A stretch of 64,000 bases of DNA from Styela clava (lineage: Eukaryota). Shown here piece by piece: positions 28,848 to 63,826 of the stretch. The stretch spans positions 12,958,001-13,022,000 of the forward strand of contig NC_135263.1 in NCBI RefSeq assembly GCF_964204865.1, written 5' to 3'. Position numbers and translations under genes: made by a program. The first letter of the stretch is position 1; each line of letters begins with the position of its first letter. The notes beneath the pieces were generated by a model, which did no database searches, was not told the origin of the DNA, and worked only from the letters and a program-made list of their open reading frames with translations.

Positions 28848-30741
28848 ATGTCTTACCAATACCGAAGCATATCTGTATTGCTCACATTCGGCTTCTTCAG
28901 TTTTTGGATTGCTTCGTGTATAGCTATCGGTGTCGGACCGGTAAGAAAAGATTTAAAATTATTGGTAGAAATCCTAAATGCTATGAATTAACGACATTTA
29001 GTAATAACAGATATCTTGGTTTAGAATTTCTTGATTTTTGAAAATTTTGAGTGGCTACTCCAACGTAGAATAATTCGAACGAATATTCAGTCTAACTCTG
29101 AAATACTGAAGAAAAAAAGCGATTCCTTCTTGAATATAAGTAGTAAATACAAATACAGAATAATGTATGTGATTAATGATACTAATATAGGCCTAAATTC
29201 CGGTCAAAGCTATTCTTTCAACTAGCTAAGTATTGACTTATAGTATATATATCATTAAACAACCTGTCCGTTTTGTAAAAAAAAACACCCATAGATGAAT
29301 TCACGAAGTGTTTGTGAATAGGGCTCTTTACCAGAAATTAACAAGAACTACTACATTCAGGGTTCTCCGTGTGGAATACCATTTGGTTCCAGTCGTTATA
29401 TGGCAAGAGAAGGTCAATTTGGTTGTTATAAATGTGATGCAAATGAATATTGGAATCGGAGAATTAAATCATGTGCGCCTTGTACAGGGTTTCTCACCAA
29501 CACCAGAGCTAACGTTAGATCATCATGCAAAGACAGAAGGTTGGTGCATTGTTATTCTGATTGTGGAAATATTTAATACTTTCAAGGTGTTGCCGGACAA
29601 AATTAATAGAGGCTTAATCAAATGGCGATTGTGATATAATCATTCCTACTCCTAACAGCATTATATAAGACAAAGACTCAATTTCTCATGAAAGACTTGA
29701 AATATAGTTTGTATACCGTTTAGTGTTCTGGTTTATTTATATGCTGGCTTTTCTCTATTGGTGTTTGTTTCGAATCAGTGATTTCTGTCGAGTTGAGGCG
29801 GTTTGATCAAGTTTTGGTGAGATAGAACCTAGTGTCTACGACAGCAATTTTTAAATAGCGTTGTTTTCTGGGCATTTACACAGAATTCCAGTAACCACGA
29901 CAGCAACAACAACAAATCCGACAGCTTCACACGTTTCTAATTCTACTTACTTAGACGAAACAAAAATTTTGATAGCTTCACATGCAAACGCTTCTACACA
30001 AGTGACAAATATAAATGCCTTAAAAAATGATACAAGCACAGTTTTGATGCCAAGAAAGCTCGAAGGAACACAAGGTATTTTAAGACATATATCAGGTAAT
30101 ATTATGCGACTTTCTACAGATATTTTCTTGTATTTATACTTATTCAATGAGACGAGGACAACATTTATAGCTGATAATTAATATGATTTCAAGAAAAAAA
30201 TATACACAATTAAAATAAATAAGAAAAAAATAATAAATAGCATACAAATTTTGACACCTCAAACAAAATACTTGTTATAAATTTGGTTTTATTTATGCAA
30301 ATGAATTTCATTAGTTATGAGTATTGGGGATAAATAATGGATGTTAAGCAAACAAAATTGCCTTTTACATTCCATACTTCCATATATGTATTTAAATGTC
30401 TGTATCAGTATTTCATCTATCGAGTCGTGTATGACCTAACAATAATGAGTGTAAGACCTTCCTTAGCAAATATTTGATATTGTTCATTAGTAAACAATCA
30501 TGTAACACCACTGCTAAAAAAATGCCGTTAAAAAGAAATATAAAATTATCACTCAATGGTAACATTTTTTCAATCAGATAAGATTTCATTACTCAAAGGG
30601 AAAAAACTTAGAAAAAGCAAACGCCGAAATAAAAGAAAACGCACCAAAGGAAAAGCGGAAAAGAAGAAAAAGCTAAACAGAATAAGAAAAAAAAGAAAAG
30701 GAAATAAAAAGAAAAATCTCAAAATAAAGAAAATCTCATAA
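28848..30741 (+). CDS. CRD-family gene A1: secreted protein (signal peptide, one TNFR-like CRD, Thr/Ser-rich stalk, polybasic C-terminal tail); exons 28848-28940, 29361-29539, 29884-30074, 30578-30741; 208 aa
   Basis: GT-AG introns with phases 0,2,1 give one frame: MSYQYRSISVLLTFGFFSFWIASCIAIGVGP / GSPCGIPFGSSRYMAREGQFGCYKCDANEYWNRRIKSCAPCTGFLTNTRANVRSSCKDRR / IPVTTTATTTNPT.. / DKISLLKGKKLRKSKRRNKRKR..KKIS* (31 of 54 residues K/R). No TM segment. Confidence 0.72.
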
Positions 30742-31619
30742 TATGAAAATATAGTCGAATTCATACAATTATTTGTACATTGCAGTGGGAATATTACGTT
30801 TTAGAAACTGTACTTTCTGCATTAAAAACTTGTCATTTTTTTCTTATTGTGCTTTTCAAGATGGCCTATTTTAAAAAACCGGTTGTATTATGTAACATTT
30901 CAAAAATTATTACAATATGTATTGTACAATCGGGCTTGTTATCATACAAAAACTAACACAATTTGCATCCGCCAATATGCATAAACCTAATGTAATTTAT
31001 GGCATTAAATTTAATAAAATAAGTAATCTGGAGGGTTGGAAACACAATAAATATGTCTTCTACGATGTGTCTATACAGCCAGTCGAAATGCTGTATAAAC
31101 AATATATATGTATATTGGAATGGATTGGAGATAATTTTGTTGTACACCGTTTGTATTGTGAATGTTCAACTAACAAACACTTAGTATCCACAGCTTATAT
31201 TTTCAAAACACTTCTACGATTTGTGTGATCTTTATTTCAAGCTGAAATTTTATTTGACAATTGTTCAAGTGACAACGTTATTTACGAAACGTTGAATACA
31301 TGTTTGTTTGTTAAATATCTTTTTCGTGCTGTTTGACGCTCAAGCAACCAGGCAAGGCGAAGCCTACCCAGGTACTCAATTGTATGTATATTAACATTTT
31401 CATTGTTAAATTTTGCCTATTGTTCATAATATATGTCAAAACATAGCAAAAATCAGGAATGACTTTTCTCACTATTGACGTAAAAAGACAGTAAGATAAA
31501 TCCAACAAAAACCAATTTCAACCTGTTGAAACTTGCGTAAACATGCCGGCCGGCTTGCGCAATATCGTGTAACGTGTTTACTAGTTCGTGACTAAAGGTT
31601 TTTTGCTTTAAAATACATG

Positions 31620-31629
31620 GGGAATTCCC
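31620..31629. promoter_or_regulatory. Perfect palindromic NF-kB (Rel) consensus site GGGAATTCCC, ~120 bp upstream of the gene A2 start
   Basis: Exact match to GGGRNWYYCC at a promoter-proximal position. Function is inferred. Confidence 0.45.
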
Positions 31630-31740
31630 TGAGGCTATCAAAGTTGAATGGGGAGCAGAATAAGGCTGATCTTTCTTTTTTGTGGAGGTTCGAGACGGGC
31701 TGTATATGAATAATTCTTTATCCCATTGCAAGCAATTTCA

Positions 31741-34209
31741 ATGTTATATAATGTGCGATGTTGTTCGATATTGCTTCTAGCAATTCAGTATGGTGTTTTA
31801 GGATTGATGACAGCAAATTCTTATGTAGTAAGTAACTGAACTATTTTTTTCATATATATTGTAAAAAATTTGAATCGTTTGTTTGATAGGGTTTAACTTA
31901 GGTAAAAACTGATTCTCAATTGTTTACAGGTTTTGACTAACATTACTAACAAACAAAGATTACTTATGGCTCGTGGTATGAGCATTTGAGTGTGGAGTAT
32001 ACAATATACATACACTCATATTCTCCTCTCGTGCTTAGTAAATCGATAAGAAAATGTGGAAATAAATATTACTCATAAACTGGTGATCGGTAGAACTAAA
32101 CATTTACAGACTGTTTCAACTCAGAATATTTTTTTGCATAATTTAACCATTATTGCAAGCCAGCCATTTTAAAATAAGCTATTGAATGTTTTTGACTAAA
32201 TGTGGATTTTATCAATAGAATATCAAAACCTCGATTTGTCACGTACGTTAGATGCAATTTAATTTCGGAATCGTTTTAATTAGATTAATTCTAAATATCC
32301 ATGGTAGTTCGTTTAGTTTGCACAAAAGTGACCAAGCAAGCGATAGTCAATATATTTTTTGTGAACCTTGTAGGGAATGCGATGTTCTTCAAGACAAATT
32401 TACATGTTGAAAGACAGCCAGTTGGTTTGTGACGACTGTGGGGTGAATGAGTATTGGTCAACACGAACAAAAACCTGTTCTTTGTGCACAAGCCCTCGAT
32501 ACACAAACTTAAAGAGGAATATCCGATCCTCTTGCAAAGATCATGTGTGAGTTGCGTTTTTTAGATTTATTAAAATTTTCAGAATATGTTTGAAAAGATG
32601 TACACTATATCGCATTAAAAATCCTATAGTAAATTATATTAAAAAAATATATATATGATTTTCTATAGCAACCCCAATTCGCGTAATATAATTTACTATA
32701 TATACTACATTTGAAAAAAGTGTATTTAATTTATCACCATCTTTCTGTAAGCAGGTATAGGAACTTGAGTTTACCAAGATAAAACAACTAAGCAACTGCT
32801 TATGTATACTTGGGTAGTGCAAACGGAATAAGTTGAGTGAAAATAACATTGAACAAAACTAATTGAACATATCAATTCAATATTCAGAAAGTCTAAAATC
32901 GTTCCAACATCTTTTGATCAGATATCGACGCAAGAAACTGAAAATTCGTACGTGGTAAGTAATTGGACAATAATGCTATAGAGTCTGAGTCCAGATCTAT
33001 TAGATTTGAGATGCTTGAAGAATAATAATTAGAAACTATAGTGTCCTATCTAGCTTCAGCCATAACCATCTTGTTTAAAGTCTCACGTAAGCCGCCATGT
33101 AGAACCCACTGTTTCTGTAACAAAGATGGATGGACCTATATTTAGTTATAGGACCTTACTTGCGCGGGTATTTGAAATACTATTCTATAGAAGTCAACTA
33201 TTCTAGCATTACTATAATTATATTGATGTTCGTATAGAAAGTTTAGCTGATGGTGTCAGCGGTGAAAGTTCATCAATTTCACGTCTTTAATATCACAGGG
33301 AACACCGTGTGCCCCACGACGACTTTACATGATAAAAAATAACCAATTGGTTTGCGACAACTGTGGAGTCAATGAATACTGGTCACGACAAACAAAAACC
33401 TGTTCCTTGTGCACAAGCCCTCGATATACAAACTTAATGAGAAATATCCGATCATCTTGCAAAGACCATATGTGAGTCGTTTTTATTTTAAGAATTTTTT
33501 CAAATCTTAGTTTGAATAGGATTATGTTTCGTTGAGAAATTGCTCAAATCAAATCGATTTTCAGAAAACCAAAAACTGTTCCAATGCCTACTTACACGAA
33601 GATCAGTACAACTCAAGGACCTAATGATTCGACCGCAATGAACCCTGTTTTTTCCAGTGAGTTATTCATTTATCGATGTACATAATATATTTACTTTCCG
33701 ATAAAAAGTATCTGTTCTAATAGTCTTTATCAAATCACAACATAAAAATAGACGTGAAGAATAATGAGATAAATTCTTAAACGATTTGCTAATGAGAGTA
33801 CACTAAATATATTTGAAATAAATCAAGGTATTCATAGCGTATCTATCTAGATTAATTGAAATCTAAATTTTACTCTTTAGCCTCAACACGGACACTTACG
33901 AGAAGTACAGATAACAGAAATCCAACTACAGGATATCGGCCCACAACTACTCAAGTGTTCACAAAACCAATAAACATTGTTACAGATACAGTTTTAAACC
34001 CAACTCGAGAGACAAACATAGTGACTGAAAAGACTGTTAATTTGACAATATTCTACTTAAGCATGGGGGTTTCATTTTTAGTTGTTATGGCAATATCCTT
34101 GATAGCTATTTTTTTCATCAAGCTTTGCATATCAAAACAACGACAAAACAATCCAAGACGAGTAAGTCAGAGTGTACCTCGCGTTACTTTGAACACCACG
34201 TCTATATGA
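31741..34209 (+). CDS. CRD-family gene A2: type I membrane receptor-like protein with two CRDs; exons 31741-31827, 32374-32546, 32888-32954, 33299-33471, 33565-33656, 33881-34209 (alternative donor after 34161); ~306 aa
   Basis: Signal MLYNVRCCSILLLAIQYGVLG; CRD1 CDDCGVNEYWSTRTKTCSLCTSPRYTNLKRNIRSSCKDH; CRD2 CDNCGVNEYWSRQTKTCSLCTSPRYTNLMRNIRSSCKDH; Thr-rich stalk; TM IFYLSMGVSFLVVMAISLIAIFFI; short basic tail. Phases 0,2,0,2,1 are all consistent. Confidence 0.8.
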
Positions 34210-35389
34210 TAAAACTTTAAGAATAGAAATATTACACCAATCACACAATGTTTATGGCTGCCACTTTGAGAGTTTGATAAAACCATTTTATCAGGTTTAA
34301 AATCATATCAATTGACCGATAACTGGTTTGAAGTTTAACGCCCGAGTCATCTTCGTGTAATTATATGTTTTCAAGCTTTAACGTCCGAACTCAACAATTT
34401 GCGTATATATCCTTTTTTTAAGCATTAACGCCCAAATTCTTCGAATTAGTGTCTTATTATAACTTATAACACCGAGCCCGTTGGATCATTTTGTTGCTGG
34501 TAATGTGATTGTATGGGGGGCAATGGACTCTGATGTCCCCAAAAGGTCATATCGTTGCCTCCCAGTCATGCACCAAAGCATCTGTCTATTTTTTGTTTAT
34601 ATGTGCTTGCATATATAGTGTGTTTTGTGGTTTGACGAATGGAATAAACTCTCTCTCTCTCACTATGTGAATGTTATAACGTTTATAATATGGGACTACA
34701 TGAGTTGCCTGTATTATTAAAAGTGATGGCAATTTTGAGTGTCTTGTCTTCAAAAGATAGTAATGTGGAAAGATCGCTCTGAAGTGAAATCAAATTCAAG
34801 ATTTTAATTATATATACGTAAGGTTAAAGGACGACGGTTATTTGCGACAGCAATTTTGATGACTTGTGTGGTACAAATGTACATAAAGCGCACTTACCAT
34901 TTAATATAAACCTCTGATAAGTCAAAATTAAGAGTTTCGAACGCTTTGATAATCATGAGCAAATTCTCAAGATGTCATTCCCGTCCCTTATCTGACTACC
35001 TCATTCAAATATTTCGTTATAGTGGCGTATAATGCCCGACAAAATGTACAGTCGTTCAAAACGCGCAATCTCGCGCGCCGGTGCGTATAAAAAATCTGAT
35101 TTTCACAATCCATTCGCGTTGCAACTCGTCGCGTAATGTTGCGTCACTTACGCCGCCGTACCCACGGTCTTCCTCTAGAACTTTCGGATTTCGCAACAAC
35201 CGTGTATAAAGGCGTAATGTTCTCCAGCACGCGCTCAATATTGCTTCGTATCTTTCCACGTTTGTATTGTGCCGGCTGTCACGTAAAAATTCAAGTAATT
35301 ATTTCTATTTGATTTATTTTGGTCATAATCATGATATTAGAATATTTTAAAGAAAATATTATTCGAATTTAGTGAAGGTATGCGAGTTA

Positions 35390-35874
35390 TGTAGAATTGA
35401 ACGCCTGCGCAACGCGATATTATATAGTTAGCGAGTTGCTTGTTGAAAAGAAACTTCACTGCTTCAAGAAACGTCCGCAGAAATCCATGCCAGGTGGCAT
35501 TAGTTAAAAACAGAGGTGCGCAACATTATTTGTCGGTGGGCCATATAACCAACTTCTGACATCTAGCTGGGCGCACAAAGAAATTAGTTTTTCCATGTAC
35601 ACAAGGAATTAAAAAATTCCCACAATGCAAAATTTTATTTATTTGATATTTTAGTGGGACACTTGGATTTTCGAGTTTTTACATACTTTGTTAACATCAG
35701 CTTCGACAGCAGTTAGAATTTTATACTTGATGTGTGACAAGGGCTGCACTAAATGGCTTGGCCGCGTTGTGACTCGTGGACTGCCTGTAAAGACCCCTGA
35801 TCTCTCCTGCGTACAATAAACGTGTACTGAAGTCGGGTAGTAAACATCATCATTTTGGACACCAGATTATCACA
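35390..35874 (+). mobile_element. Putative solo LTR (second copy at 45248-45732)
   Basis: TGT...ACA ends, an internal TATA-like motif and AATAAA; homology to the ~53965 paralogous flank resumes right after the ACA end. The TSD is imperfect (gtta/gttt). Confidence 0.3.
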
Positions 35875-36772
35875 GTTTCGACTGTATTTCAATTATTAAG
35901 TTAGCGTTCGGGAGAATAGGCTTTACGCTATACAGCCTCATGTTGCGCCACGGCTTCGTCCTTTGTATTGAAAATACAGTCACCTCTCAAAACCAAGTCT
36001 ATTTGAATATAGGAGCAAATTTAATTCAGGAAATAATCCAAAACTTTCATACATTAAGATAAGAAAGACAATGTAGTAGTCTGTAGCAACATACAGGCAG
36101 TGAAGTAGTATATGTATGTATAGAGGAAGGACATGAAATTAGAAGATCAGAAGTAACTTTTTTTAAATGACGAAAAATTATTTTTATAATTATTTCCTAA
36201 CTTTTTCATATGAAATTTGCCAAAGAAAAAACAATTAGTTAGTTAGTGATATTAGAATTGGAACATAGAATAGATATTAGAATTGATATTAGAACTAAAC
36301 AAAAATATCAAATTAAGCGACTTCTTACAGATGTTTTTCTTGCTTCTTTATCTAGTTATTGTGATGAACCCAACACCTATATCCGATAATTTATATGGTT
36401 TCAGACAAATAGTCATACAACTAAAATTTATCAATAAAAAAAATGATAATAACCATACAAATTTTGACACTTCAACTAACATACTTTGGTTTCATTAGGT
36501 CAAGTGAATCTTATTGAGTAAGAGTACAGGGGATATATGATAGATGTTAAGCAAACAAAATTGCCATTTAAATTCCATATATGTATTTAAATGTCTGTAT
36601 CAGTATTTTATCTTTCAAGTCGTGTATGACTTAACAATAATGAGTGTAAGACCCTCTTTTAGCAAATATTTGATAATGTTCATTAGGAAACAATCATGTA
36701 ACACCGCCGCTAAAAAATGCCGTTAAAAAGGAATATAAAAGTATCACTCAATGGTAACATTTTTTCAATCAC

Positions 36773-36939
36773 ATTCGATTTCATTACTCAAAAGAGAAAA
36801 ACGTAGAAAAGGCAAACGCCGAAATAAAAGAAAACGGTTGCGCACCAAAGAAAAAGCGGAAAAGAAGCAAAAACTCAACAGAATAAGAAAAAGAAATAAA
36901 AAAAGAAAAACTCAAGATAAAGAAAAACTCCTAATATGA
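36773..36939 (+). pseudogene. Orphan copy of the A1 polybasic terminal exon (acceptor AG changed to AC)
   Basis: Homologous to 30578-30741 inside a duplicate of 30230-31560. No phase-compatible upstream exon in this unit; reads caatcAC instead of caatcAG. Confidence 0.65.
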
Positions 36940-37076
36940 AAATATAGGCTAATTAATACAATTATTTGTACATTGCAGTGGGGATATTAAGTTTTAGAAA
37001 CTGTAGCTACTTTCTGCATTAAAAAGTTGTCATTTTTTTCTTATATATTGTGTTTTTTAAGATGGCCTATTTAAAA

Positions 37077-39860
37077 ACAAGAGAGCAATGATCATATATG
37101 GAAATATATGGACACGCAGAACAATTCCCCAAAAATCATATGCGGTGACCAACGACTAACATACCGGCGGTGACTTACCAGTACCTGTATCGGGGTACCG
37201 TGACGGTACAGGGACTGTCATAGATATTTTAGGTCCTGTGACAATTGAAACATCAGTTGAAATATCTCGTGATATGAGTCAATTATGTACCGTATTATCG
37301 GATCAGGTACCGAACCACAGTCAAACATTTCACATAAAAACGTTACTAAATAACATGCGTCAACTTAACACCAGCCGAATCGAGGTACAATTTTTGGTAC
37401 AGTGACTGTCATAGCCGTTTAGGGCTGATGAACAATTCGACTACACGGACAACTCACCAGGCCTAGGGTGGTGTAGCCCGTCTGCGGACAATTTCATTCA
37501 AACCGCTATAAAACAAAAACCAATATATCTAACCCGTTAATTTTTTCACCGTGGGTGCATTGGCGGCATTTATTCTACACGCTAAACCTCGTATTAACTT
37601 TCTACGACAAAGGGTTAAAGCTATACAAATCCCCAAAGTACGGCACTCGAAAGACGTATTTGCGACCGAACGACCAGTGTGCGACCACGGATTTCAAGCC
37701 TTGATCATCGTTTCTGCTGCGTCGAGACTATCGCATACGCAGCCATACAGCAATCAAACAGACAAAACACGGTGGTCGCAAATTGGTTGACAAAGATATT
37801 ATCGACGTATTAGGATAGGATTTACATATTTATCCCGGGGGAGAGAAGTAACTATCAAAGATGGTTAACAAAACTCTACCCACCTGCCAAGTTTCATCTT
37901 TTTATCTCTTATATTTGTATGGATTTTCAAGCTTTTGACAGCTACGAGTTAGTTCAGTGTCACCGCTTTCTGACCGTCATATATTTCAAGAACACGGTTA
38001 TTTCGAACAAAACTCGTTAAATTATAAACAAAGCACCACATCACAGCAATCAAACAGACGAAAACACGGTGGTCGCAAATTGGTTGACAAAGATATTATC
38101 GACGTATCGGAAATGCACACCCCCTATTCCCCCTCCTTCATATGTAGAAACGCGAAACCTTCAAATAAGGTTAAAAGAAACACAACTCTACCCACCTGCC
38201 AAGTTTCATCTTTTTATTTCTCATATTTGTATGGATTTTCAAGCTTTTGACAGCTACGAGTTAGTTCAGTGTCACCGCGCTGTGTTACGGTACCAGAACT
38301 TCTCTATCTTTAGAAGGTCCTGTCTTGTGACAGCGTGAATTGAAATTGCAAGATGGTCCGTTGGACACAAAATGGCGTCCTATATCCGAGAACGTTTAGT
38401 GACGTCATAGCAAACAAAAACAAATCTTACAGAGCTAACAGAAATATTTGAAATAAATAAAAGTAATAGCCTTCTGGAGAAAAATTTCATCTTCAACCAC
38501 TGAAAATTTCAAAGCAATTAGTCCAGTAATCAAAGAGAAAAGCGACTTTTTAAAAACGTGTCAAAGAACAAGAATAAGAACAAGAACAAGAGAGCTATGC
38601 TCAAATATATGGACACGTAGAGTCACATAATTTTGATGACGTCATAGCAAAAAAAAAAGTAATAGCCTTCTGGAGAAAATTTTTATCTTTAACCACTAAA
38701 AATTTCAAAGCAATTGGTCCAGTATTCGAAGAGAAAAGCGACTTTTTAAAAACGTGTCAAGCGGTACTGAGTTAGCAGTCAGGCAGCATCTTACCTGTAC
38801 ACTGTAGGCCATATACGGTAATTGATCACAGAACAGTTGTTCCCTTGCAAATTTTATGTTGTTTACACTTTAGGACAGATAATTGATCACAGAACAATTC
38901 TTCCCTTTCAAATTTTATGTTGTTTCCAGTAGACTCTCATCAAAATAAACAAATATAGTAGGCTACAAGTGCTACAACGCTTGCATTACTGCACTGGTAG
39001 GACCGTGAAAGAATAAGTTACGGTAATTTCATTGTGGTAAGACACCGGTACCGGCACCAGTACCAGTATCGTACTTACGTACTGAGCTACCAGTACCGGT
39101 TAGCAGTCAGCCAGCATCTTACCTGTACACTGTAGGCCATATACGGTAATTGATCACAGAACAGTTGTTCCCTTGCAAATTTTATGTTGTTTACACTTTA
39201 GGACAGATAATTGATCACAGAACAATTCTTCCCTTTTAAATTTTATGTTGTTTTCAGTAGACTCTCATCAAAATAAACAAATATAGTAGGCTACAAGTGT
39301 TTCATTGTGGTAAGACACCGGTACCGGCACCAGTACCAGTATCGTACTTACGTACTGAGCTACCAGTACCGGTACCGAACCTGTAGGTCTGATATTCCGT
39401 TCCGCATACGATAGGCTATAAAACTTGCATTGCAGCATTAGTAATACCGCGGAAGGAATAAGTCAATTTCACTGCGTTACGGTACCGGTACCTACAGTAG
39501 CTGTAGTACTGAGCAAGACAATCGATCGCGAAACCGCTTGAAATAAGTGTAAAACAGTGTTCCCATGAGTAAAAATAAATACCGCGAAATTTTGTATGAA
39601 ATATCATATCTCATAGGATTCATATAAAATTTAAGAATAAACAAAAGTAATAGCCTTCTAGCGAAAAAATTAATCTTTAACCACTGAAAATTTCAAAGCA
39701 ATTGGTCCAGTATTCGAAGAGAAAAGCGACTTTTTAAAAACGTGTCAAAGAACAAGAACAAGAACAACAACATAATATTGAAACGATCGTTATGTCCACT
39801 ACGTGTCCAACAACAACAACATAATATTGAAACGATCGTTATGTCCACTACGTGTCCAAT
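37077..39860 (-). mobile_element. Helentron-type non-autonomous element (HINE) with internal ~296-bp tandem repeat; hosts a nested HINE
   Basis: Absent from the paralogous empty site near 30875. Subterminal IRs tggacacg(c/t)ag ... ctacgtgtcca, an (AAC/AAG)n microsatellite, insertion into an A run without a TSD, and repeat units at ~37748 and ~38044. Confidence 0.75.
38587..39810 (-). mobile_element. Nested HINE inserted into the (AAC)n microsatellite of the outer element
   Basis: caagagagctatgctc (gagc-tat-gctc hairpin)..tggacacgtag ... ctacgtgtccaa. Missing from the unit-2 copy, where the flanks join cleanly. Internal ~328-bp tandem repeat (38772, 39100). Confidence 0.8.
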
Positions 39861-41494
39861 AACAGGTGTATTGGGTAACATCTCAAAAGTTATCACATTA
39901 TGTATTGTACAATCAGGCTTGTTACCATACAGAAACTAACACAATTTGCATCCGCCAGTATGCATAAACCTAATGTAATTTATAGCATTGAATTTATCAA
40001 AATAAGTAATCTGGAGGTTTTGAACTACAATAAAGTCGTCTACAATGTGTCTATACAGGCAGACAACATGCCATATAAACAATATATATATTTGAATGAA
40101 TTAAACGGAATTTTGCTGTACACCGTTATATAGCTTGAGGGAGGTTTATATTCATTGGATTTCTAAAATTTTAACTTGGGAATGTTCAATTAACAAACAC
40201 TTAGTATCCTCAGCTTGTATTTTCAATACACTTCTACGATTTGTGTGCGATTTAAATAAGCTGAAATTATATTTGACAATTGCTCAAGTGACAACTTTTA
40301 TTTACGAAACGTCGAATACATGTTTTTCTTGAATATCTCGGACGAGGCTAAGCCTACACAGATACCGTAATGTATCAATCTTTACATTTTCATTGTTAAA
40401 CTTTTTTATTATTCATATTATATGTCAAAACAAGTAAAAAAAAATGCGTTGGAAAAGGACTCTTCTCACTATTGACGTACGAAGACAGTAACCCAAATCC
40501 GATTCCAGCCTGTTGAAACCGCCGGCTTGTGCAATGTAGCGCAACGTGATAACAGCACGAGTCACAGTGCGGGCTTCTGGAACTTTCGGAAAGTTTCACA
40601 CCGTCCCGTAGCTTTCAACTTTGGGTTGCGCTGGGTGTCAGGTAAAAATTCAGTATTTACATTCAGAGTATTTATAATTTAATTACTTTCATAGATTGAG
40701 ATATAATGAAAAGGGTAGTAGTCTGCAGCAACGTACAGGCAGTGACATAGTATATAAATGTGGACATAGAAGGACAAAAAATTATAATATCAGAAGTAAC
40801 TTTTTTTCTAATGGGATAATTTCAAAAGGACAAAAAATTATATTTTCTATTTTTACCATATGAAATTTGCCAAAGAAACGGTTATTTCGATGTAGTGTAA
40901 GTTCAAGTTGTCTGTTCTGTATAGTTCCCAAATACCTAAAATAAAATGTAGCCTATACATAGACAGCAAAGATGTATGAAATGTATATTTGGTCGGTATC
41001 TATATTGATATTAGAATTAGTTTAGAAATAACATAAATTTAGAATATAGAACACACACAAAATATTCCCAATTATATTGTTGTGCTATATATATATATAT
41101 TTTTTAGAGTCATAAAAATAGGAAATGATGCTAGGTAGCAATCAAGATCAAAGTATCCTTTATGTTATTCGACATATTATAGGTAACAAATATGTCTGGG
41201 TCAGCGATGACATGTTACTTCTTTGAGTTTTTTTTTCTCTAAATGAAGCAAAAATTTTTATAGAAATGAAAAAATTAGATAAAATAGGGATATATTTTAT
41301 GTAAATAGAAACTTTCCTTTTTTGTAAAATACGTAAAATTATAAAATAAAGAAAAGTGATATCACACATGAACCAGGAAATTGCTAACCAGAAACCGAAT
41401 TACACTTCATAATATTTTGTTTTATGTAGATCTTTCTCATGTCACCAGCAAACCCGACATCATAATATCCGTTTCCACACCAGAGGCGAGGAGA

Positions 41495-41508
41495 GGGGCG
41501 TGGCCAAT
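41495..41508 (+). promoter_or_regulatory. GC-box (Sp/KLF) plus CCAAT composite GGGGCGTGGCCAAT, conserved upstream of genes B, C (50086-50099) and D (55183-55196)
   Basis: Identical 14-mer in the diverged D upstream region. A promoter role is inferred. Confidence 0.4.
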
Positions 41509-41756
41509 TACGATTTAATAAAATTATCATTTCAACTTTTTAAATGAACGCTTACGTTAAAAAAAGGTATAATAATTCTTGGATTCGATGTTTCTTAGAC
41601 AAATTAGCATAGGCTACCTATAAATCGATATTTTTTCACTCTTTTTGTTGTTTTCAAGGTTAGGGTGGTAGGTTTTTCAAATTTAGAATTGAAAATGAAC
41701 AGAACAAAATTGATTGTTAGGGCTTCATCCTATAAATTTCAGTCTACCTTGTTTAT

Positions 41757-42088
41757 AACCTTTAACCTTTTTTTTCTAATTTATTGAATATTGCTCAAGA
41801 AAATCAGTAGTGAGTTAGAAACCCAGAAAACACCGTTTGTGCGCGTAGGATTATGCATGACAACGTTGGTCCCAAGCAGAAGCAAATTTTCTCAAACTAA
41901 AATCGCGTGACAACAATGGGCCACGAGGCGGCGATGGGGGAGGAGAAATGCGCCTCGTATTTCGCATTTGCTCGAACAACGGTTATTGAACGAGACGTTA
42001 GTAGAATTTCTCACGCGTTTGAGCAAAGAGTTGACAATTTTTAGGATGGGTATAAAAAGTCGATTTGGACCATCGAAGAGAAAGGGTT
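41757..42088. mobile_element. ~330-bp MITE-like insertion upstream of B (copy at 50348-50679 upstream of C), absent upstream of D
   Basis: D reads taccttgttcaatggaaaatccgaccc without it; ends aacc(c)ttt...aaagggtt. Confidence 0.45.
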
Positions 42089-42313
42089 TGGGAAATCCGA
42101 CCCTGCTCTTGCATCTAGTGTTCTCGCCTCAACTGCCCATTACCAAAACTAAATTTGATCACGATGCTCTTGTGTAGCAAATGTGAAAAGAAAATAATTT
42201 CATTTTTGTGTAACATCTTTATGATCTGTCAACATTTTTATCTCATAAGCACTGTTCTTATTTAGATAGTCTTATATTTAACCCCTCTACTCCAATTCAC
42301 ATATTTTTGCACC

Positions 42314-43594
42314 ATGGCGTTTAATATATGGACTGAATTGATATTTCTTGCTTCTATCAATATGCTCTGCGATGCATCATCTTTGAAAATTAAGGTGAAA
42401 TATTTTATATTTTTAACCACTAAACATAGTCTTAATAACAAAGCAACTGAAAATGTTGCAGATTTTATTCCAAGTTTTATTCCACGGGTATAAACTTCGC
42501 TACATGGCAAGGTGGTTAAAGTCGAAAAAGCTGTAGTTGAACTGAAAGTATATATCAATCGGCATTCAAACTTGCTCTGCTCAAACCTTCCATGCGAAAA
42601 ACACAGCTGGTTTTCGAACTTCAGTAAGCAGTAACATAAAGCAATTAAATCCTATTGAACAATAACATATTTTATTATAGATCGGCGACCCTTGCGGAAT
42701 TCCTCATGGATCTGGAAGATGGATGAACAAAAATAACACATTTGGGTGTGATCAGTGTGATGCAGGCGAATATTGGGATTCGTATAATAACACATGTTCG
42801 CCGTGCACTGGTTCACTGACCAGCTGCAAACCAAATGTATTATCAAGTTCTTGCAGTCACCATTGGAGGTGAGTATAGTTTTCGATTAGTTTATGTTTCC
42901 ATAATCATCGATTACTTTACCAATACACGCGTGTACGATACACTCGTAATAATGCAGCAGAGCTGACATAAAAAATTGGCTTCTTTGACACCAAGCCCGG
43001 TTCACGAGTCTTAATCCCAAGCATTTAACTGAATAACCGAAATACTCAAATAAGTGCGCTTTCGTACATAAACCCCTTTATTGGGAGTAATGGTAACTGT
43101 AGCAGTATTTTTAGCTTTCATTTGGACAGTAACATTATCGGAACCAAAAAACAAACTATTTTTCTCAACGTTATAGGGATTGTGAGACCACGTCACCCAG
43201 CACAACTACAAGAAATGTGTCAACTGATAAACCAGTGATCAATACTTCGTTGAATATTCACAGCACGGCGTCAGTTGAACATATCACCAGTCCAACATCC
43301 ACCAAAGAAATAACCAATGCGAATATTAGGCCAATTACTTCGGCCTCGTTTCAGTCGTCTTTTACTTCAAGCACAACTGTGAAAACCAGTGTTGAACACA
43401 GCGAAAAAACACATTTAGAGCCATGGGTTTACATTATTATAGTACTGGGGTTAATATTTCTCATTGTCAGTATTGCTATTTTAATATTTAGAGTATATAA
43501 ACATCGCACATCGCAGCAAAGTAGGCCTCCAAATGATACACTAGACAACCTGACTGATTCTGGCGAAAAGTTGCTCGAAAACAGCCAATCTTGA
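42314..43594 (+). CDS. CRD-family gene B: type I membrane receptor-like protein with one 8-Cys CRD; exons 42314-42394 (tentative), 42681-42868, 43177-43594; 228 aa
   Basis: CRD IGDPCGIPHGSGRWMNKNNTFGCDQCDAGEYWDSYNNTCSPCTGSLTSCKPNVLSSSCSHHWRDC; Ser/Thr stalk; TM WVYIIIVLGLIFLIVSIAILIF; tail ending DSGEKLLENSQS*. Exon 1 (gcaccATGG context, MAFNIWTELIFLASINMLCDA, phase 0) is less certain. Confidence 0.75.
42914..43131. other. 218-bp indel in intron 2 of gene B relative to gene C
   Basis: The intron is 308 bp in B and 90 bp in C. Weak terminal inverted similarity; it could be a MITE insertion in B or a deletion in C. Confidence 0.6.
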
Positions 43595-50900: not shown

Positions 50901-51963
50901 ATGGCGTTTAATATATGGACCGGATTGATATTTCTTGCTTCTATCAATATGCTCTGCGATGCATCATCTTTGAAAATTAAGGTGAAATATTTTATATTTT
51001 TAACCACTAAATATAGTCTTAATAACAAAGCAACTGAAAATGTTGCAGATTTTATTCCAAGTTTTATTCCACGGGTATAAACTTCGCTACATGGCAAGGT
51101 GGTTAAAGTCGAAAAAGCTGTAGTTGAACTGAAAGTATATATCAATCGGCATTCAAACTTGCTCTGCTCAAACCTTCCATGCGAAAAACACAGCTGGTTT
51201 TCGAACTTCAGTAAGCAGTAACATAAAGCAATTAAATCCTATTGAACAATAACATATTTTATTATAGATCAGCGACCCTTGCGGAATTCCTCATGGATCT
51301 GGAAGATGGATGAACAAAAATAACACATTTGGGTGTGATCAGTGTGATGCAGGCGAATATTGGGATTCGTATAATAACACATGTTCGCCGTGCACTGGTT
51401 CACTGACCAGCTGCAAACCAAATGTATTATCAAGTTCTTGTAGTCACCATTGGAGGTGAGTATAGTTTTCGATTAGTTTATGTTTCCATAATCATCGATT
51501 ACATTATCGGAACCAAAAAACAAACTATTTTTCTCAACGTTATAGGGATTGTGAGACCACGTCACTCAGCACAACTACAAGAAATGTGTCAACTGATAAA
51601 CCAGTGATCAATACTTCGTCGAATATTCACAGCACGACGTCAGTTGAACATATCACCAGTCCAACATCCACCAAAGAAATAACCAATGCGAATATTAGGC
51701 CAATTACTTCGGCCTCGTTTCAGTCGTCTTTTACTTCAAGCACAACTGTGAAAACCAGTGTTGAACACAGCGAAAAAACACATTTAGAGCCATGGGTTTA
51801 CATTATTATAGTACTGGGGTTAATATTTCTCATTGTCAGTATTGCTATTTTAATATTTAGAATATATAAACATCGCACATCACAGCAAAGTAGGCCTCTA
51901 AATGATACACTAGACAACCTGACTGATTCTGGCGAAAAGTTGCTCGAAAACAGCCAAGCTTGA
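50901..51963 (+). CDS. CRD-family gene C (recent duplicate of B); exons 50901-50981 (tentative), 51268-51455, 51546-51963; 228 aa
   Basis: Open spliced frame with a few substitutions versus B (E>G in the signal, G>S before the first Cys, P>L, terminal S>A). Confidence 0.75.
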
Positions 51964-52040
51964 AAGCCCGATATCTGATTTCAAAAATATTACTCGTGTT
52001 TTTCTCTTAGTGTCTTCTTAATTTATTGGCATTATTTATT

Positions 52041-55400: not shown

Positions 55401-56349
55401 AAGGTTAAGGTGGTAGAGTTTTTCAAATTTAGAATTGAAATTGAATAGTACAAAATTGAGTATAGAGGCCCGTAAGAGCTTCAGCCCATAAGTTTCAGTT
55501 TACCTTGTTCAATGGAAAATCCGACCCTGCTTTTGCATCCAGATTTCTCTCCCTAACTGTCCATTAACAAAACTGAATTAGATCACGTTGCTTTCGCGCG
55601 GCAAATGTGAAAAGAAAATAAATTCATGTCTGTGTAATATTTATATGATCTGTCAACATTTTTATTCCATAACTGAAGCACTATTTATTTAGATATTGTT
55701 ATATTAAACTCTACTCCAATCTATATATTTTTGCACCATGACGTTTCATATATTGACTCAATTGATGTTTATTGCTATTTTCAATATCCACTGCGAAGCA
55801 CCATCAAGGTGAAATATCTTTAACCACTAAACATCGTCATAACAACGAAGCAACTAAAATGTTGCCGATTCTATTCCAAGCACGGGTATAAACTTCGCTA
55901 CACAACGTGTTTAAAGTCGAAAAAGCTGTATATGAACTGAAAATATATATCAATCCGTATTCAAACTTGCTCTGCTCAAACCTCCCATGCAAAAAAAACA
56001 CAACGGGTTTTCGAACTTCAGCAAGCAGTAACATAAAGCAATTAAAGCCTATTGCACAATACCATATTTTATTATAGATTGGCGACCCTTGCGGAAATCC
56101 TTATGGATCGGGAAGATGGATGAACAAAGATAATACATTTGGGTGCTATCAGTGTGATGCTGGCCAATACTGGGATTCATATAACAGCAAATGCTCTGCT
56201 TGTCAAGGGTCACGGACGAGCTGTCAAAACAACGTATTATCAAATGCATGTAGTCAACATCGGAGGTCAGTCTAAGTTTCAAATAGTTAAATATTGATAA
56301 TCCTTGATTTCTTACAACCCTAAATCTCGAATATCTTCAGTATCTAAAT

Positions 56350-57046: not shown

Positions 57047-57054
57047 ATCTAAAT

Positions 57055-58064: not shown

Positions 58065-59165
58065 ATCAGTATATAAAGTTTGAATCGTATGGCCTACCAA
58101 TTGGAAAATAACAAATATCGAAATCCATAAAAAAAACTATATTTCTCGTCTTTGTAGAGACTGCGAGGGCACTTCACCCATCACACCCACAGAAACTGTT
58201 TTGACGGATCAAGCAGCGACCAATACTTTGTCGACTATTATCAGCACGACGTCAATTGAAGATATTACCAATCCAACAACTAATAAAGAGATAAGCAGCG
58301 TCGATATTCTGTTGGATACTTCACCCCCAACGCAACTGTGCTTGACTATAAATACAACTGTGAAGACCAGTGTCGAACACAACGCAATTACACATACAAA
58401 GCCATGGGTCTACATCATTATCGGAGTTGTGGTGCCACTATTTCTTGTTATTATCGCTTTTTTCATCAAAGTATATAAACATCGCATAACACAACGAAGA
58501 AAAAATACACCATAGAACGTGTCTCATTCTGAGCAAAGGTTGCTCAAACACAAGCAAGTTTAATAGACTATACTGTATAAAATACGCCATAATGAATTAG
58601 TGTGATAACACTTTTATTTAATTTATGTCAAAATATAAAACAAATTAGGTATAGCTTGTATCAATTATATATATAATTGTTTTATATTTTTGGATAATAT
58701 TCGAAATACAACGAAAAACACGACACAAACTCTTCAAATTAATGTGTGATATTCATTGGATACTTCTGTTAAACAGTGAATAGAAATACCGCAACAAAAC
58801 GCAAAATATCAGGTCATGAAATAGTAACAAGATTGTTTTTGTTTGCTCAGTGTAGCCCTGAAGATCGGAGCTAAATGGAAATAGAAACACTGGGTATTGG
58901 AAATACTCTAGCGTTTATGACTTATGATGCTTCGTTCCTTGGCGAGTGGTGGCTTTTGAGTGTATTCAAAGATGAATCGGTCTGTACTCGCCTGGTAGGT
59001 CATTTTTCATGTGTGTGGTACAGATTTCACAACAAGGTTTAAGGTTATTGTTTGGTTATTGTGTATGATAAATTGTACACATATATGGGATATGAAAAGG
59101 ACTCGCACTCTTGCGCGTGAGTTGATCACAGTTATCGAGCTTGTTCAACGATGTTTTATCTAAAC

Positions 59166-62100: not shown

Positions 62101-62616
62101 GCGAAAGATAACTAGAAAATCACAAAAAATGCAAATTTCTGCCCTGGTGATCACGTTCTCCATAAGAGCCAATGTTAAAATTATTTTGTTTACGCCACTT
62201 TTATTTTTGCGCGTAGGATGGGTTTTGAATGACTAAGGTTTATTACAAATGTATGATGTAACAAATAATGACATCATAAACGTAAATACGTTTTGAGCTA
62301 TGTAGGCTATCCCCTATCATATCAACGGTTAACGCCTAAATACGACGCATAATGACAAACGTGAAATTTATTTCGAAGGATATCGCACTACTATGCTCCG
62401 CTGCTCTCTTGCGCTACACTGCGACAACTATAAACTTTATTGGTAATATAACACCGTGAATCTTTCGTAAATTAGATGACATCATCAGCACATCATTGAG
62501 TGAGATCCTTAAATTTTCAAAAGATGCTTCCGCATATATGATAAAAAAAATATTGCGCTGTCTTAATTATTTCTTTGACCGCCAAATATTTATCTTGTTA
62601 TATTAGGCCCATATCA

Positions 62617-62827
62617 GGGTAGTTCCGTTGTGCGTGTACCAGGTTTGGGTTAGGTCATAATTTCATTCGATTTTCCTTATTTTAATTCCATTGCAAGTTC
62701 GGGGACTGTCTGTTTAGCCAAGTGAATATACCCCATGCCCATAGTTTTCAGTCCCTTCACACAACTTGATGTAAATTAGGCGGAACAAAGTAAGTTACCT
62801 CCATATTGGTGTTGGTCTGGATTGCCC
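62617..62827. mobile_element. MITE related to 19023-19259
   Basis: Shares 'gtacca..ttagg.cataat..attttccttattt..agttcggggact..agccaagtga'; absent from the paralogous site at ~53728. Confidence 0.5.
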
Positions 62828-62951
62828 AAGTCAGCAACCTGGGGATTTTCTTGAAATCTTCGTTGAGCAACCATATTGCGACATGTGTCAGAGCTGCCAG
62901 CGCCCTTTAAACTAAAGGCAGGCTAGGCCTATCTACGTTTTTCCCCTTAAA

Positions 62952-63826
62952 ATGGACGTAACAAAGAGATATGGATGGTTTATGCTGATATTGATGTTTA
63001 TATGTTATTCGGACGTCTTGACAAAGACAAAGGTTAACTTACGGAAACGCACGGTAAGTAATCTAAGATTTCATATTATAACTGAGAAATCTGAGCAAAA
63101 TTTTAATATGAATGTAAAATGCTCATACAAGAAAAAACAACGCCACCAATAGTAAGAATCGCAGCTGCACGTGAGTAACATAATGATACTAAAACTGTCA
63201 CTCCGACTTAAAACAATCATTTACATTTCTAAACCACTGTCAGTGTTCCATATGCATTGATCAATTCTCATTCTAGTGACCCAGCTCGTAGAACCACTAT
63301 TGGTTTAATTCGTCTTAACTGTGTGAAAGACTAATCATGAATGAACGTAAAATCTCAGTGAGATTTGTAACGAATATGGAACGACTTTTTATAATTCTAA
63401 ACCGAAACTAGCTAGTTACACCTAGTTTTAAAATATTGTTTCAAATATAGCTGTTATTTTCTATAGATATTTGTAAGTAATGGTACGGCCCCGCCGCTAC
63501 CACTAGTGAACGGCAGACAAAAAGGCAATACTTTTTTTTTTTAGAAAAAAAGTTCAATATTGTTAGATTATTCTTAGTGCTTTACTCCACCAAATTTGTA
63601 GTGTAATGATGTTATTGTGCTTCAATATTATAATATAATACATATCACGATGTAATTTTCAAATTTTTAGAAAGAAAGGCACATTCACCCACATAGATAC
63701 CACAGCAAATGCAATGTTGGGGAATATCGGTCTAGAAAAGACAGAAAATGTTTACCTTGCACGGATCCCGAATACACAAATCTCATTCCAAGTAATAGGA
63801 AATCATGCAAAAATCATATAAAGTAG
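62952..63826 (+). CDS. CRD-family gene E: signal peptide, basic segment and 4-Cys mini-CRD; exons 62952-63053, 63671-63826 (85 aa secreted form), or splicing after 63822 to exons beyond the window
   Basis: MDVTKRYGWFMLILMFICYSDVLTKTKVNLRKRT|gtaagt, joined in phase 0 to KERHIHPHRYHSKCNVGEYRSRKDRKCLPCTDPEYTNLIPSNRKSCKNHIK*, clearly homologous to the A2 CRDs. Confidence 0.72.

What the first reader, a model, noticed from the sequence alone, without database searches (positions are those of the whole stretch)
28848..63826. Tandem array of BCMA/TACI-like single-CRD receptor and soluble-decoy genes in an invertebrate
Seen: seven homologous phase-0-acceptor Cys-rich exons (29361, 32374, 33299, 42681, 51268, 56078, 63671) in six + strand genes, none translated in the correct frame by the ORF track. 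Their core C-x3-[EQ]Y[WR]-x6-C-x2-C (e.g. CDAGEYWDSYNNTCSPC, CDAGQYWDSYNSKCSAC) has the 17-residue spacing of human BCMA (CSQNEYFDSLLHACIPC) and TACI (CPEEQYWDPLLGTCMSC), quoted from memory. Established: BCMA, TACI and BAFF-R are compact TNF-receptor-family members known from vertebrate B-cell biology. Inference: this is a lineage-expanded TNFR-like recognition locus with membrane forms (A2, B, C, D), soluble forms (A1, E), short tails lacking a death domain, and birth-and-death turnover. It is possibly an undescribed immune or allorecognition system.
Basis: partly seen in the sequence, partly recalled or inferred. Interest (0 to 1): 0.9.

Follow-up and report, generated by a model that had tools for sequence, protein, structure and literature searches.

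The report
Sea-squirt cluster of small TNFR-like receptors
This stretch of the sea squirt Styela clava genome holds a real, tandemly duplicated family of small membrane glycoproteins whose cysteine-rich head looks like a TNF-receptor module. The claimed link to the vertebrate B-cell receptors BCMA and TACI rests on one short hairpin motif and fails every formal family test.

Summary
Seven homologous Cys-rich exons lie on the + strand at the stated coordinates, in six genes. NCBI already annotates these genes in Styela clava as "uncharacterized protein". Each gene encodes a signal peptide, one CRD (two in one gene), a Ser/Thr-rich stalk, a TM helix and a short tail.

The whole genome holds only about nine such exons. 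A search of 1.84 billion proteins found relatives only in Styela, plus two unnamed SRA-derived proteins.

The CRD is under purifying selection (dN/dS 0.09-0.24). The stalk is relaxed (0.44-0.65).

The cluster shows birth and death:
- a very recent ~9.85 kb tandem duplication;
- an orphan frameshifted exon;
- a probable pseudogene (gene D);
- a TM-less gene (A1).

BCMA is the top Pfam and PDB sequence hit, but only over the A1 hairpin, below threshold, and indistinguishable from chance at genome scale. The DxL tip, the CxxCxxxC signature and the signal-peptide-less topology are absent.

A low-confidence AlphaFold model matches almost only TNFR-type CRDs, at weak Z (at most 4.5).

Verdict: an undescribed, lineage-restricted TNFR-like single-CRD receptor family, not a demonstrated BCMA/TACI homologue. 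The ligand is unknown, and nothing supports allorecognition. No RNA evidence could be obtained.

The parts
28848..28940 (+). Gene A1 (LOC120340352) exon 1: start codon and signal peptide, phase 0 donor
   Evidence: P0003 residues 1-31 map here at 97% identity.
29361..29539 (+). Gene A1 CRD exon (6 Cys)
   Evidence: E 5e-30. Folded alone: pLDDT 63.9, two beta-hairpins.
29884..30095 (+). Gene A1 Ser/Thr-rich stalk exon; no TM segment follows
   Evidence: Sequence read. P0003 residues 145-202 map here.
30578..30741 (+). Putative last exon of A1, encoding a Lys/Arg-rich tail. It lies in a purine-rich 776-bp segment found only in this cluster.
   Evidence: The NCBI model P0003 uses it. Copies of the segment at 36312 and 46177 are 81% identical and intergenic. 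There are no other genomic copies. No RNA evidence was obtained.
31741..31827 (+). Gene A2 (LOC120340354) signal-peptide exon
32374..32546 (+). Gene A2 CRD1 exon
   Evidence: P0022 residues 30-87 match at 100%.
32888..32954 (+). Gene A2 linker exon between the two CRDs. It ends in the same ...NSYV as exon 1, a trace of the internal duplication.
   Evidence: P0022 residues 88-109 match at 100%.
33299..33471 (+). Gene A2 CRD2 exon
   Evidence: dN/dS against CRD1 is 0.17.
33565..33656 (+). Gene A2 stalk exon
   Evidence: P0022.
33881..34209 (+). Gene A2 stalk + TM + short tail exon
   Evidence: P0022 residues 199-291 match at 100%.
33786..52004 (+). Recent tandem segmental duplication: unit 33786-43635 repeated at 43637-52004 (95-98% identity)
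   Evidence: C1/C2 dS is 0.01-0.03.
42314..42394 (+).
42681..42868 (+). Gene C1 CRD exon (7 Cys; the 8th Cys is at the start of the next exon)
   Evidence: E 4e-32. P0024 matches at 100%.
43177..43594 (+). Gene C1 exon 3: last Cys, 41% Ser/Thr stalk, TM, 34-aa tail
   Evidence: The TM helix has pLDDT above 90.
43759..44042 (+). Orphan duplicate of gene A2's TM exon, with a 1-nt deletion in a T-run (frameshift). The NCBI model P0022 uses it, frame-shifted, as a 3' exon.
50901..50981 (+).
51268..51455 (+). Gene C2 CRD exon
51546..51963 (+). Gene C2 stalk/TM/tail exon, intact
55738..55808 (+). Gene D signal-peptide exon remnant. It is 71 nt long because of a 10-bp deletion, so it is out of frame with the CRD exon.
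   Evidence: The NCBI model P0007 starts at an internal Met and has no signal peptide.
56078..56265 (+). Gene D (LOC144431907) CRD exon, still open
58158..58515 (+). Gene D stalk/TM exon. A premature in-frame TAG removes the conserved C-terminal motif.
62952..63053 (+). Gene E (LOC120340355) signal-peptide exon
63671..63822 (+). Gene E CRD exon: 4 Cys only, the first hairpin is missing. The gene continues past the window end, with its TM exon at L010 679-1008.

Best explanation
This is a cluster of paralogous genes restricted to Styela, or perhaps to stolidobranch ascidians.

Architecture. The genes encode small type I membrane glycoproteins of about 190-320 aa. Each has a cleavable signal peptide and one ~55-65-residue disulfide-rich domain (two in gene A2). 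The domain's conserved pattern is C-x14-17-C-x2-C-x12-C-x2-C-x13-15-C. It is followed by a mucin-like Ser/Thr-rich stalk, one TM helix and a short tail of about 20-35 aa with no death domain.

The domain. It is a divergent member of the broad TNFR-like class of stacked beta-hairpin CRDs, which includes TNFR_c6, BCMA/TACI, Ephrin_rec_like, NCD3G and ELAPOR. It is not a demonstrable orthologue of BCMA, TACI or BAFF-R.

Most likely mechanism (inferred). The CRD is held above the cell surface on a glycosylated stalk. It binds an extracellular protein ligand mainly through the tip of the conserved E-Y-W hairpin. That tip is acidic/neutral (D-S-Y-N) in the C/D clade and Arg/Lys-rich in A1, A2 and E, so the clades would differ in partner. 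The short tail would recruit adaptors or sorting machinery. The C clade keeps a C-terminal ...T-D-S-x-E-x-L-L-E-N-S-Q-x motif. A trimeric TNF-superfamily ligand is the leading candidate partner, at roughly 30% within this reading.

Evolution. The cluster evolves by tandem duplication and decay. C1 and C2 are a very recent duplicate pair. D is decaying. A1 has lost its TM exon and may be secreted.
For: Shown:
- Seven exons and six gene models match NCBI proteins.
- The genome holds only two further CRD exons, on C13 and C1.
- A profile search of 1.84e9 proteins finds single-CRD kin only in S. clava, plus two Logan proteins (P0016, P0018) with the same architecture.
- CRD dN/dS is 0.09-0.24, against 0.44-0.65 for stalk, TM and tail.
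- The TM helix has pLDDT above 90. The stalk is 41-44% Ser+Thr.

Fold class:
- AF2 on the CRD gives two beta-hairpins at pLDDT 64.
- An all-against-48,161-chain structural search returns 41 chains at Z>=2; the rows listed are nearly all TNFRSF CRDs, class C GPCR CRDs, ELAPOR1 or Eph CRDs. The Foldseek list is of the same kind.
- The best PDB sequence hit is BCMA, then ELAPOR1.
- The family profile also hits multi-repeat Ephrin_rec_like/TNFR_c6-positive proteins at E 1e-6 to 1e-4.
- The ESM-feature neighbours are TACI and BCMA clusters.

Context:
- Styela species carry 10-13 TNFSF genes, including relatives of the EDA/APRIL/BAFF lineage (PMC12843592).
- TNFR_c6 passes its cut-off at only two loci here.

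Decay and duplication.
Against: - No Pfam family reaches its gathering score.
- hhalign against Styela's own TNFR_c6 and Ephrin_rec_like exons gives only 25% and 33% probability, over 16-19 columns.
- Structural Z is at most 4.5, on a model of pLDDT 64 built from 10 sequences. AlphaFold may simply have placed a Cys-rich hairpin in the nearest familiar shape.
- All the sequence-based pointers key on the same ~17-residue hairpin, so they are not independent.
- No transcript, protein, ligand or expression data were obtained.
- No canonical TRAF-binding motif was seen in the tails by inspection.
- No TNF ligand gene lies in the window.
Confidence: 0.6

Rival explanations
1. These are true evolutionary homologues of the vertebrate BCMA/TACI/BAFF-R (or Fn14) minimal-CRD receptors. 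They would descend from the receptor of the ancestral EDA/APRIL/BAFF-type (V22) ligand and still serve as receptors for the tunicate TNFSF-T2/T3/T4 ligands.
For: - BCMA is the top hit of both Pfam and the PDB profile search.
- The top three named ESM-Atlas clusters are TACI and BCMA.
- In the C/D clade the six Cys from the hairpin onward are spaced C-x12-C-x2-C-x6-C-x8-C-x6-C. BCMA has C-x12-C-x2-C-x3-C-x8-C-x3-C. The hairpin reads E-Y-W-D-S against BCMA's E-Y-F-D-S.
- Tunicates have V22-related ligands, one group found only in stolidobranchs (PMC12843592).
Against: - Scores are below threshold and cover profile positions 1-18 of 37 only.
- Native BCMA chains give E 0.1-0.4 against a database of only 177,635 sequences.
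- Genome-wide the BCMA model gives E 5.95, mixed with chance hits, and it also 'rings' in bacterial controls. The TACI and Fn14 models are silent.
- No vertebrate BCMA or TACI appears among the hits of the 1.84e9-protein search.
- The ligand-contacting D-x-L tip (definition: PMC8024323) is D-S-Y in one clade and absent in the others.
- The extra Cys pair is clade-specific, not ancestral to the family.
- These proteins have signal peptides and an extra N-terminal hairpin.
- ESM scores of 0.80-0.83 lie in the range that shuffled proteins reach a third of the time.
- No relatives were found in Ciona, amphioxus or vertebrates.
Confidence: 0.12
2. The Cys-rich head is not a TNF-ligand receptor at all. 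It would be a single hairpin unit derived from, or convergent with, Ephrin_rec_like/GCC-type repeats. The proteins would be membrane mucin-like molecules (adhesion, barrier, co-receptor or endocytic cargo receptor) with some non-TNF partner.
For: - The only database-scale significant hits outside the family are multi-repeat Ephrin_rec_like proteins.
- Ephrin_rec_like appears as a weak Pfam hit for A1 and both A2 CRDs.
- The spacing C-x2-C-x12-C-x2-C equals that repeat's unit.
- hhalign is marginally higher to Ephrin_rec_like than to TNFR_c6 (32.5% against 25.2%).
- The long Ser/Thr stalk, the weak sialomucin MGC-24 hit (E 0.002) and the acidic-dileucine-like tail all fit sorting or mucin biology.
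Against: - Those significances come from summing many repeats, while this family has one unit.
- The Ephrin_rec_like model does not find the exons genome-wide.
- Structural neighbours are dominated by genuine TNFRSF CRDs.
- Strong constraint on the CRD relative to the stalk argues for specific binding, not a bulk mucin role.
Confidence: 0.23
3. The cluster is largely non-functional. It would be decaying gene copies and gene-prediction artefacts, with the C1/C2 pair being an assembly duplication of two haplotypes.
For: - Gene D has a 10-bp deletion and a premature stop.
- There is an orphan frameshifted exon.
- A1 lacks a TM segment and ends in a low-complexity tail.
- C1 and C2 differ by only 2-5%, within the range of tunicate heterozygosity.
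- No RNA evidence was obtained.
Against: - dN/dS of 0.09-0.24 across old paralog pairs (dS 0.7-1.6) shows long-term constraint.
- C1, C2, A2 and the unlinked C13 copy have fully intact exons and splice sites.
- Homologues with the same architecture exist in two independent SRA assemblies.
Confidence: 0.05

Closest known systems
BCMA (TNFRSF17) / TACI CRD2 / BAFF-R: minimal single-CRD TNF receptors of vertebrates
   Same: - Small single-pass proteins with one compact CRD and a short tail without a death domain.
- The same A1-type hairpin spacing C-x12-C-x2-C, with E-Y-[WF]-D-S in the C/D clade.
- BCMA is the top Pfam and PDB sequence hit.
   Different: - Scores are below threshold, and only half the Pfam profile aligns.
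- There is no D-x-L tip and no C-x2-C-x3-C signature.
- No helical second module is predicted.
- A signal peptide and an extra N-terminal hairpin are present, plus a long mucin stalk.
- No recognisable TRAF motif.
- There is no orthology signal in the 1.84e9-protein search.
Canonical TNFR superfamily CRDs (Pfam TNFR_c6: HVEM, DR6, RANK, OX40, CD27 and others)
   Same: The predicted stacked beta-hairpin fold matches these almost exclusively. They share the conserved aromatic after C1 and the C-x2-C turn.
   Different: - TNFR_c6 does not detect the exons.
- There is one domain rather than 3-4.
- The conserved set is 6 Cys, compatible with a 1-2/3-4/5-6 ladder rather than the 1-2/3-5/4-6 pattern. 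Connectivity was not determined.
- Z is at most 4.5.
Drosophila Grindelwald / Wengen: invertebrate single-CRD TNF receptors
   Same: Type I membrane proteins with a signal peptide, a single small CRD, a short tail and no death domain. They set a precedent that highly divergent single CRDs can be genuine TNF receptors despite poor sequence similarity (PMC8024323).
   Different: - Grnd has an X2 hairpin plus a helical C2 module and the CxxCxxxC signature (PMC8024323; bioRxiv 10.1101/2024.07.27.603686). These are not seen here.
- No sequence hit was found.
Ephrin_rec_like / ELAPOR1 / NCD3G TNFR-like cysteine-rich repeats
   Same: The unit spacing C-x2-C-x12-13-C-x2-C with G-x-Y is the same. The family profile hits such proteins at E 1e-6 to 1e-4, and ELAPOR1 is the second PDB hit. 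They also appear among the structural neighbours.
   Different: - Those are long tandem arrays or parts of large receptors, while here a single unit sits on a mucin stalk.
- The Pfam score is 11-13 bits against a cut-off of 23.1.
- The genome-wide model scan misses the exons.

Membership tests
BCMA/TACI/BAFF-R (Pfam PF09257, PF09305, PF09256) | Score over the Pfam gathering threshold across the CRD | tested here: not met
   - BCMA-Tall_bind scores 16.8-17.1 bits against a cut-off of 27, over profile positions 1-18 of 37, for A1, C1 and C2 only. D and E get nothing.
- The genome-wide scan gives E 5.95 at rank 6.
- TACI-CRD2 gives no hit on the window.
- BaffR-Tall_bind is absent from the hmmscan output at E<=10.
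BCMA/TACI/BAFF-R | A1 beta-hairpin C-x12-C-x2-C with a conserved aromatic | tested here: met
   All seven exons carry it. It aligns to BCMA residues in the PDB search.
BCMA/TACI/BAFF-R | Asp-x-Leu ligand-contact motif at the hairpin tip (as described in PMC8024323) | tested here: not met
   The C/D clade has D-S-Y-N. A1 has N-R-R-I, A2 has S-T-R-T and S-R-Q-T, and E has S-R-K-D.
BCMA/TACI/BAFF-R and Grnd-like | Second module with C-x2-C-x3-C spacing and helical C2/D2 structure | tested here: not met
   The spacing is C-x2-C-x6-C in the C/D clade only, and the third Cys is absent in A1, A2 and E. AF2 predicts no helix after the hairpins, but at low pLDDT.
BCMA/TACI/BAFF-R | Type III topology (no cleavable signal peptide); this feature is taken from general knowledge | tested here: not met
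   Every intact gene has a separate hydrophobic signal-peptide exon.
BCMA/TACI/BAFF-R | Binds BAFF/APRIL-type TNF ligands; TRAF-binding tail | not testable with these tools
   Full-length Styela TNFSF sequences could not be obtained unaltered for co-folding. Tails show no canonical (P/S/A/T)-x-(Q/E)-E or P-x-Q-x-x-D motif by inspection.
TNF receptor superfamily (Pfam TNFR_c6 PF00020) | TNFR_c6 profile match | tested here: not met
   There is no hit at E<=10 in hmmscan of the exons or in the genome-wide scan. hhalign to Styela TNFR_c6 exons gives 25% probability over 19 columns.
TNF receptor superfamily / TNFR-like CRD fold | Elongated stacked beta-hairpin, disulfide-ladder fold | tested here: inconclusive
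   The AF2 model has pLDDT 63.9 and two hairpins. Foldseek's best E is 1.2. VIA-align Z is 2-4.5, and almost every listed row is a TNFRSF or TNFR-like CRD.
Ephrin_rec_like (PF07699) | Profile match over cut-off, and tandem repetition of the unit | tested here: not met
   Scores are 11.3-13.1 bits against a cut-off of 23.1. The genome-wide scan misses the window. There is a single unit per CRD. hhalign gives 32.5% over 16 columns.
Fn14 (stn_TNFRSF12A PF12191) | Profile match | tested here: not met
   No window hit in the genome-wide scan or in hmmscan.

The most novel reading that the evidence does not exclude
These genes are the tunicate receptors for the EDA/APRIL/BAFF-lineage (V22-type) TNF ligands that are expanded in ascidians, including the stolidobranch-only T4 group. 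They would share ancestry with the vertebrate minimal-CRD receptors BCMA and TACI. The BAFF/APRIL-BCMA/TACI type of ligand-receptor pair would then predate vertebrates and B cells.
Probability: 0.12. Interest if true: 0.8.

Novelty: new variant of a known kind. Interest (0 to 1): 0.4.

Why it matters
[quoted passage not shown] A recent survey showed they have a surprisingly large and fast-changing set of TNF ligands: 10-13 in Styela, including relatives of EDA, APRIL and BAFF (PMC12843592). That survey does not treat their receptors, and the standard TNFR model passes its cut-off at only two loci in this genome.

This cluster is a concrete, testable candidate for some of the missing receptors. 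It holds small surface proteins whose constrained head domain looks TNFR-like but escapes all profile models. If binding were shown, it would bear on when minimal single-CRD TNF receptors arose.

If not, it remains a tidy example of a lineage-specific receptor-like family evolving by tandem duplication, exon orphaning and decay. That is of local rather than general interest.

Tried and rejected
Exons were searched by reference, one at a time. Whole proteins came only from database hits (P0001-P0024).
- Full-length AF2 of P0024 gave pLDDT 52.8, with the CRD below 70. It was not used for fold search.
- Foldseek against the PDB gave no hit at E<=0.001.
- hhalign against Styela's own TNFR_c6 and Ephrin_rec_like exons gave low, indistinguishable probabilities.
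- The only genome hit covering the whole BCMA profile (C8:21714060, E 2.3) lacks the CxxC and is a chance match.
- Allorecognition or diversifying selection was rejected at the whole-domain level, because dN/dS is far below 1.
- A linked ligand gene was looked for and not found. There is no TNF-domain hit within about 3.9 Mb on this chromosome.
- Literature searches for the LOC identifiers found nothing.

Full report
**Organism and status**

The window is Styela clava chromosome-scale contig C18:12,958,001-13,022,000. The genes in question are already modelled by NCBI as "uncharacterized protein": LOC120340352, -353, -354, -355, LOC144431979 and LOC144431907. They are therefore not hidden genes. 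They carry no family assignment, and no paper mentions them.

**Observation**

Each exon follows an AG acceptor in phase 0 and ends two bases into a codon. A profile of the seven exons retrieves them from the 377 Mb genome at E 1e-19 to 4e-32. It finds only two more: an intact paralogue on C13 (LOC144428071) and a distant copy on C1. The family is thus small and almost entirely contained in this window.

**Gene models**

Exons were searched by reference. Whole proteins came from database hits, which I mapped back with tblastn.

- **A1** (28848-30741): signal peptide, 6-Cys CRD and Ser/Thr stalk, with no TM segment. The NCBI model ends in a Lys/Arg-rich exon. That exon lies in a purine-rich 776-bp segment found only in this cluster. 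Its other two copies are intergenic, about 2 kb downstream of A2's last exon. A1 therefore looks like a duplicate that lost its TM exon. Whether the basic tail is really expressed is untested.
- **A2** (31741-34209): two CRD exons joined by a 67-nt linker exon, then stalk, TM and tail.
- **C1** (42314-43594) and **C2** (50901-51963): signal peptide, an 8-Cys CRD whose last Cys lies in exon 3, a stalk that is 41-44% Ser/Thr, a TM helix and a 34-aa tail.
- **D** (55738-58515): a 10-bp deletion puts the signal-peptide exon out of frame, and a premature TAG removes the conserved C-terminus. It is a probable pseudogene.
- **E** (62952 to beyond the window): a 4-Cys CRD lacking the first hairpin. 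Its TM exon lies 0.7 kb past the window end, so it is a membrane form and not soluble.

**Turnover**

- A 9.85 kb unit (33786-43635) is repeated in tandem at 43637-52004, at 95-98% identity.
- This duplication produced C2. It also produced an orphan copy of A2's TM exon, which now carries a 1-nt frameshift.
- The current NCBI model of A2 splices into that orphan exon in a shifted frame.
- C1/C2 dS is 0.01-0.03. Older pairs have dS of 0.7-1.6.
- Without reads, I cannot exclude that the C1/C2 pair is a haplotype mis-join.

**Selection**

CRD dN/dS is 0.09-0.24 in all pairs, including A2's two CRDs. For stalk, TM and tail it is 0.44-0.65. The Cys-rich head is therefore the constrained, functional part. 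There is no sign of the diversifying selection expected of an allorecognition determinant.

What does vary between clades is the tip of the conserved hairpin. It reads D-S-Y-N in C1, C2, D and the C13 copy, and is Arg/Lys-rich in A1, A2 and E.

**What the domain is**

- No Pfam family passes its cut-off. The best is BCMA-Tall_bind at 17 bits against 27, over profile positions 1-18 of 37. Ephrin_rec_like and ELAPOR1 TNFR-like follow, weaker still.
- Against all PDB sequences, the family profile's best hit is BCMA. E is 0.005 for the two best-scoring 35-residue chains (8qy9_A, 8qyb_A; taken here to be engineered variants) and 0.1-0.4 for native ones, over the hairpin only. ELAPOR1 comes next.
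- The BCMA model run over the whole Styela genome places a window exon sixth at E 5.95, among obvious chance hits. It also rings in bacterial controls.
- The TNFR_c6, Ephrin_rec_like, TACI-CRD2 and Fn14 models do not find the exons.
- In the exhaustive HMMER search of 1.84 billion proteins, single-CRD kin are the Styela paralogues plus two unnamed Logan proteins of the same architecture.
- The remaining hits at E 1e-6 to 1e-4 are mostly multi-repeat Ephrin_rec_like proteins. Many of these also score on TNFR_c6, NCD3G and ELAPOR models. Two exceptions were a C2H2 zinc-finger protein (E 4e-9) and a protein with an IL-13 receptor Ig-like domain. No vertebrate BCMA or TACI appears.
- hhalign to Styela's own TNFR_c6 and Ephrin_rec_like exons gives 25% and 33%, again over the hairpin only.
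- ESM-feature neighbours are TACI and BCMA clusters at 0.80-0.83, a range reached by a third of shuffled proteins.

All the sequence pointers therefore read the same ~17-residue A1-type hairpin and are not independent.

**Structure**

AF2 on the full protein was poor, apart from the TM helix. On the CRD alone it gave pLDDT 63.9 and two beta-hairpins. Foldseek found nothing significant.

The exhaustive VIA-align search over 48,161 chains returned 41 chains at Z 2-4.5. The rows listed are almost all TNFRSF CRDs (HVEM, DR6, CrmE, RANK, CD27, OX40, LTbR, OPG, TNFR1/2, GITR, 4-1BB, DR5, Fas, EDAR) or TNFR-like CRDs of class C GPCRs, ELAPOR1 and Eph receptors.

It is not met. The evidence for a TNFR-like fold is qualitative, not statistical.

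**Why it is not BCMA/TACI**

- The D-x-L tip that makes the main ligand contact in BCMA, TACI and BAFF-R (PMC8024323) is absent.
- The C-x2-C-x3-C signature shared by BCMA, TACI and Grnd-like receptors is replaced by C-x2-C-x6-C in one clade and is absent in the others.
- That second Cys pair is clade-specific.
- These proteins have signal peptides, an extra N-terminal hairpin and a long mucin stalk.
- No relatives were found in Ciona, amphioxus or vertebrates.

**Context**

The window holds no TNF ligand gene. The nearest weak TNF-domain hit lies about 3.9 Mb away on the same chromosome.

Published work shows that tunicates have a large, dynamic TNFSF: Styela has 10-13 genes. The T2/T3/T4 groups are related to the vertebrate EDA/APRIL/BAFF ancestor, and T4 is limited to stolidobranchs (PMC12843592). 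TNFR_c6 passes its cut-off at only two loci in this genome. Divergent receptors are therefore to be expected. This makes a TNF ligand the leading, but unproven, candidate partner.

**Verdict**

This is a real, constrained, lineage-restricted family of single-CRD membrane glycoproteins with a TNFR-like head, evolving by tandem birth and death. The BCMA/TACI reading is a motif-level resemblance. The novel reading, pre-vertebrate receptors of V22-type ligands, stays open at about 12%.

Noticed in passing
window 59800-62050 (+): A non-LTR retrotransposon remnant lies between genes D and E. ORF 60855-61343 matches reverse transcriptase RVT_1 at E 7.7e-18. The flanking ORFs are broken into pieces.
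   Followed up: partly
window 11901-17004 vs 19600-25259: Another pair of diverged tandem duplicates (77-87% identity in six blocks) lies upstream of the cluster. Its content was not identified, and it does not match the CRD profile.
   Followed up: no
window 34161 -> 43759: The current NCBI model of the two-CRD gene (P0022) splices from a GTAAGT donor inside the TM exon into the orphan duplicated exon 9.6 kb downstream. The orphan exon is read in a shifted frame and gives a new 30-aa C-terminus. If the junction is real, the duplication has created a new 3' end.
   Followed up: partly
gene A1 stalk, window 29884-30095, vs P0003: The older-assembly protein P0003 carries an extra ~36-aa internal repeat in the Ser/Thr stalk that is absent from this window. 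C-type proteins from the older assembly (P0002, P0004) differ from C1/C2 at several CRD residues, and P0002 has a different signal peptide that is not found in the window. These may be stalk-length and copy or allele polymorphisms between individuals.
   Followed up: partly
G000:C4:6356917-6357036 (+) and C4:6358790-6358915 (-): The best TNFR_c6 exon in the genome lies about 1.8 kb from a weak TNF-domain hit on the opposite strand. This agrees with another first-reader note about a tail-to-tail TNFR/TNF pair.
   Followed up: no
G000:C4:20.43-20.54 Mb and C2:16.91-16.96 Mb: There are two large clusters of Ephrin_rec_like / TNFR-like repeat exons, with dozens of hits, including a 664-aa open frame made of repeats.
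   Followed up: no
L009 1318-1683 (-) = G000:C1:18868903 region: A distant family member keeps the 6-Cys pattern (C-x17-C-x2-C-x12-C-x2-C-x14-C) and has the Thr-rich stalk in the same exon. Its gene structure was not examined.
   Followed up: partly
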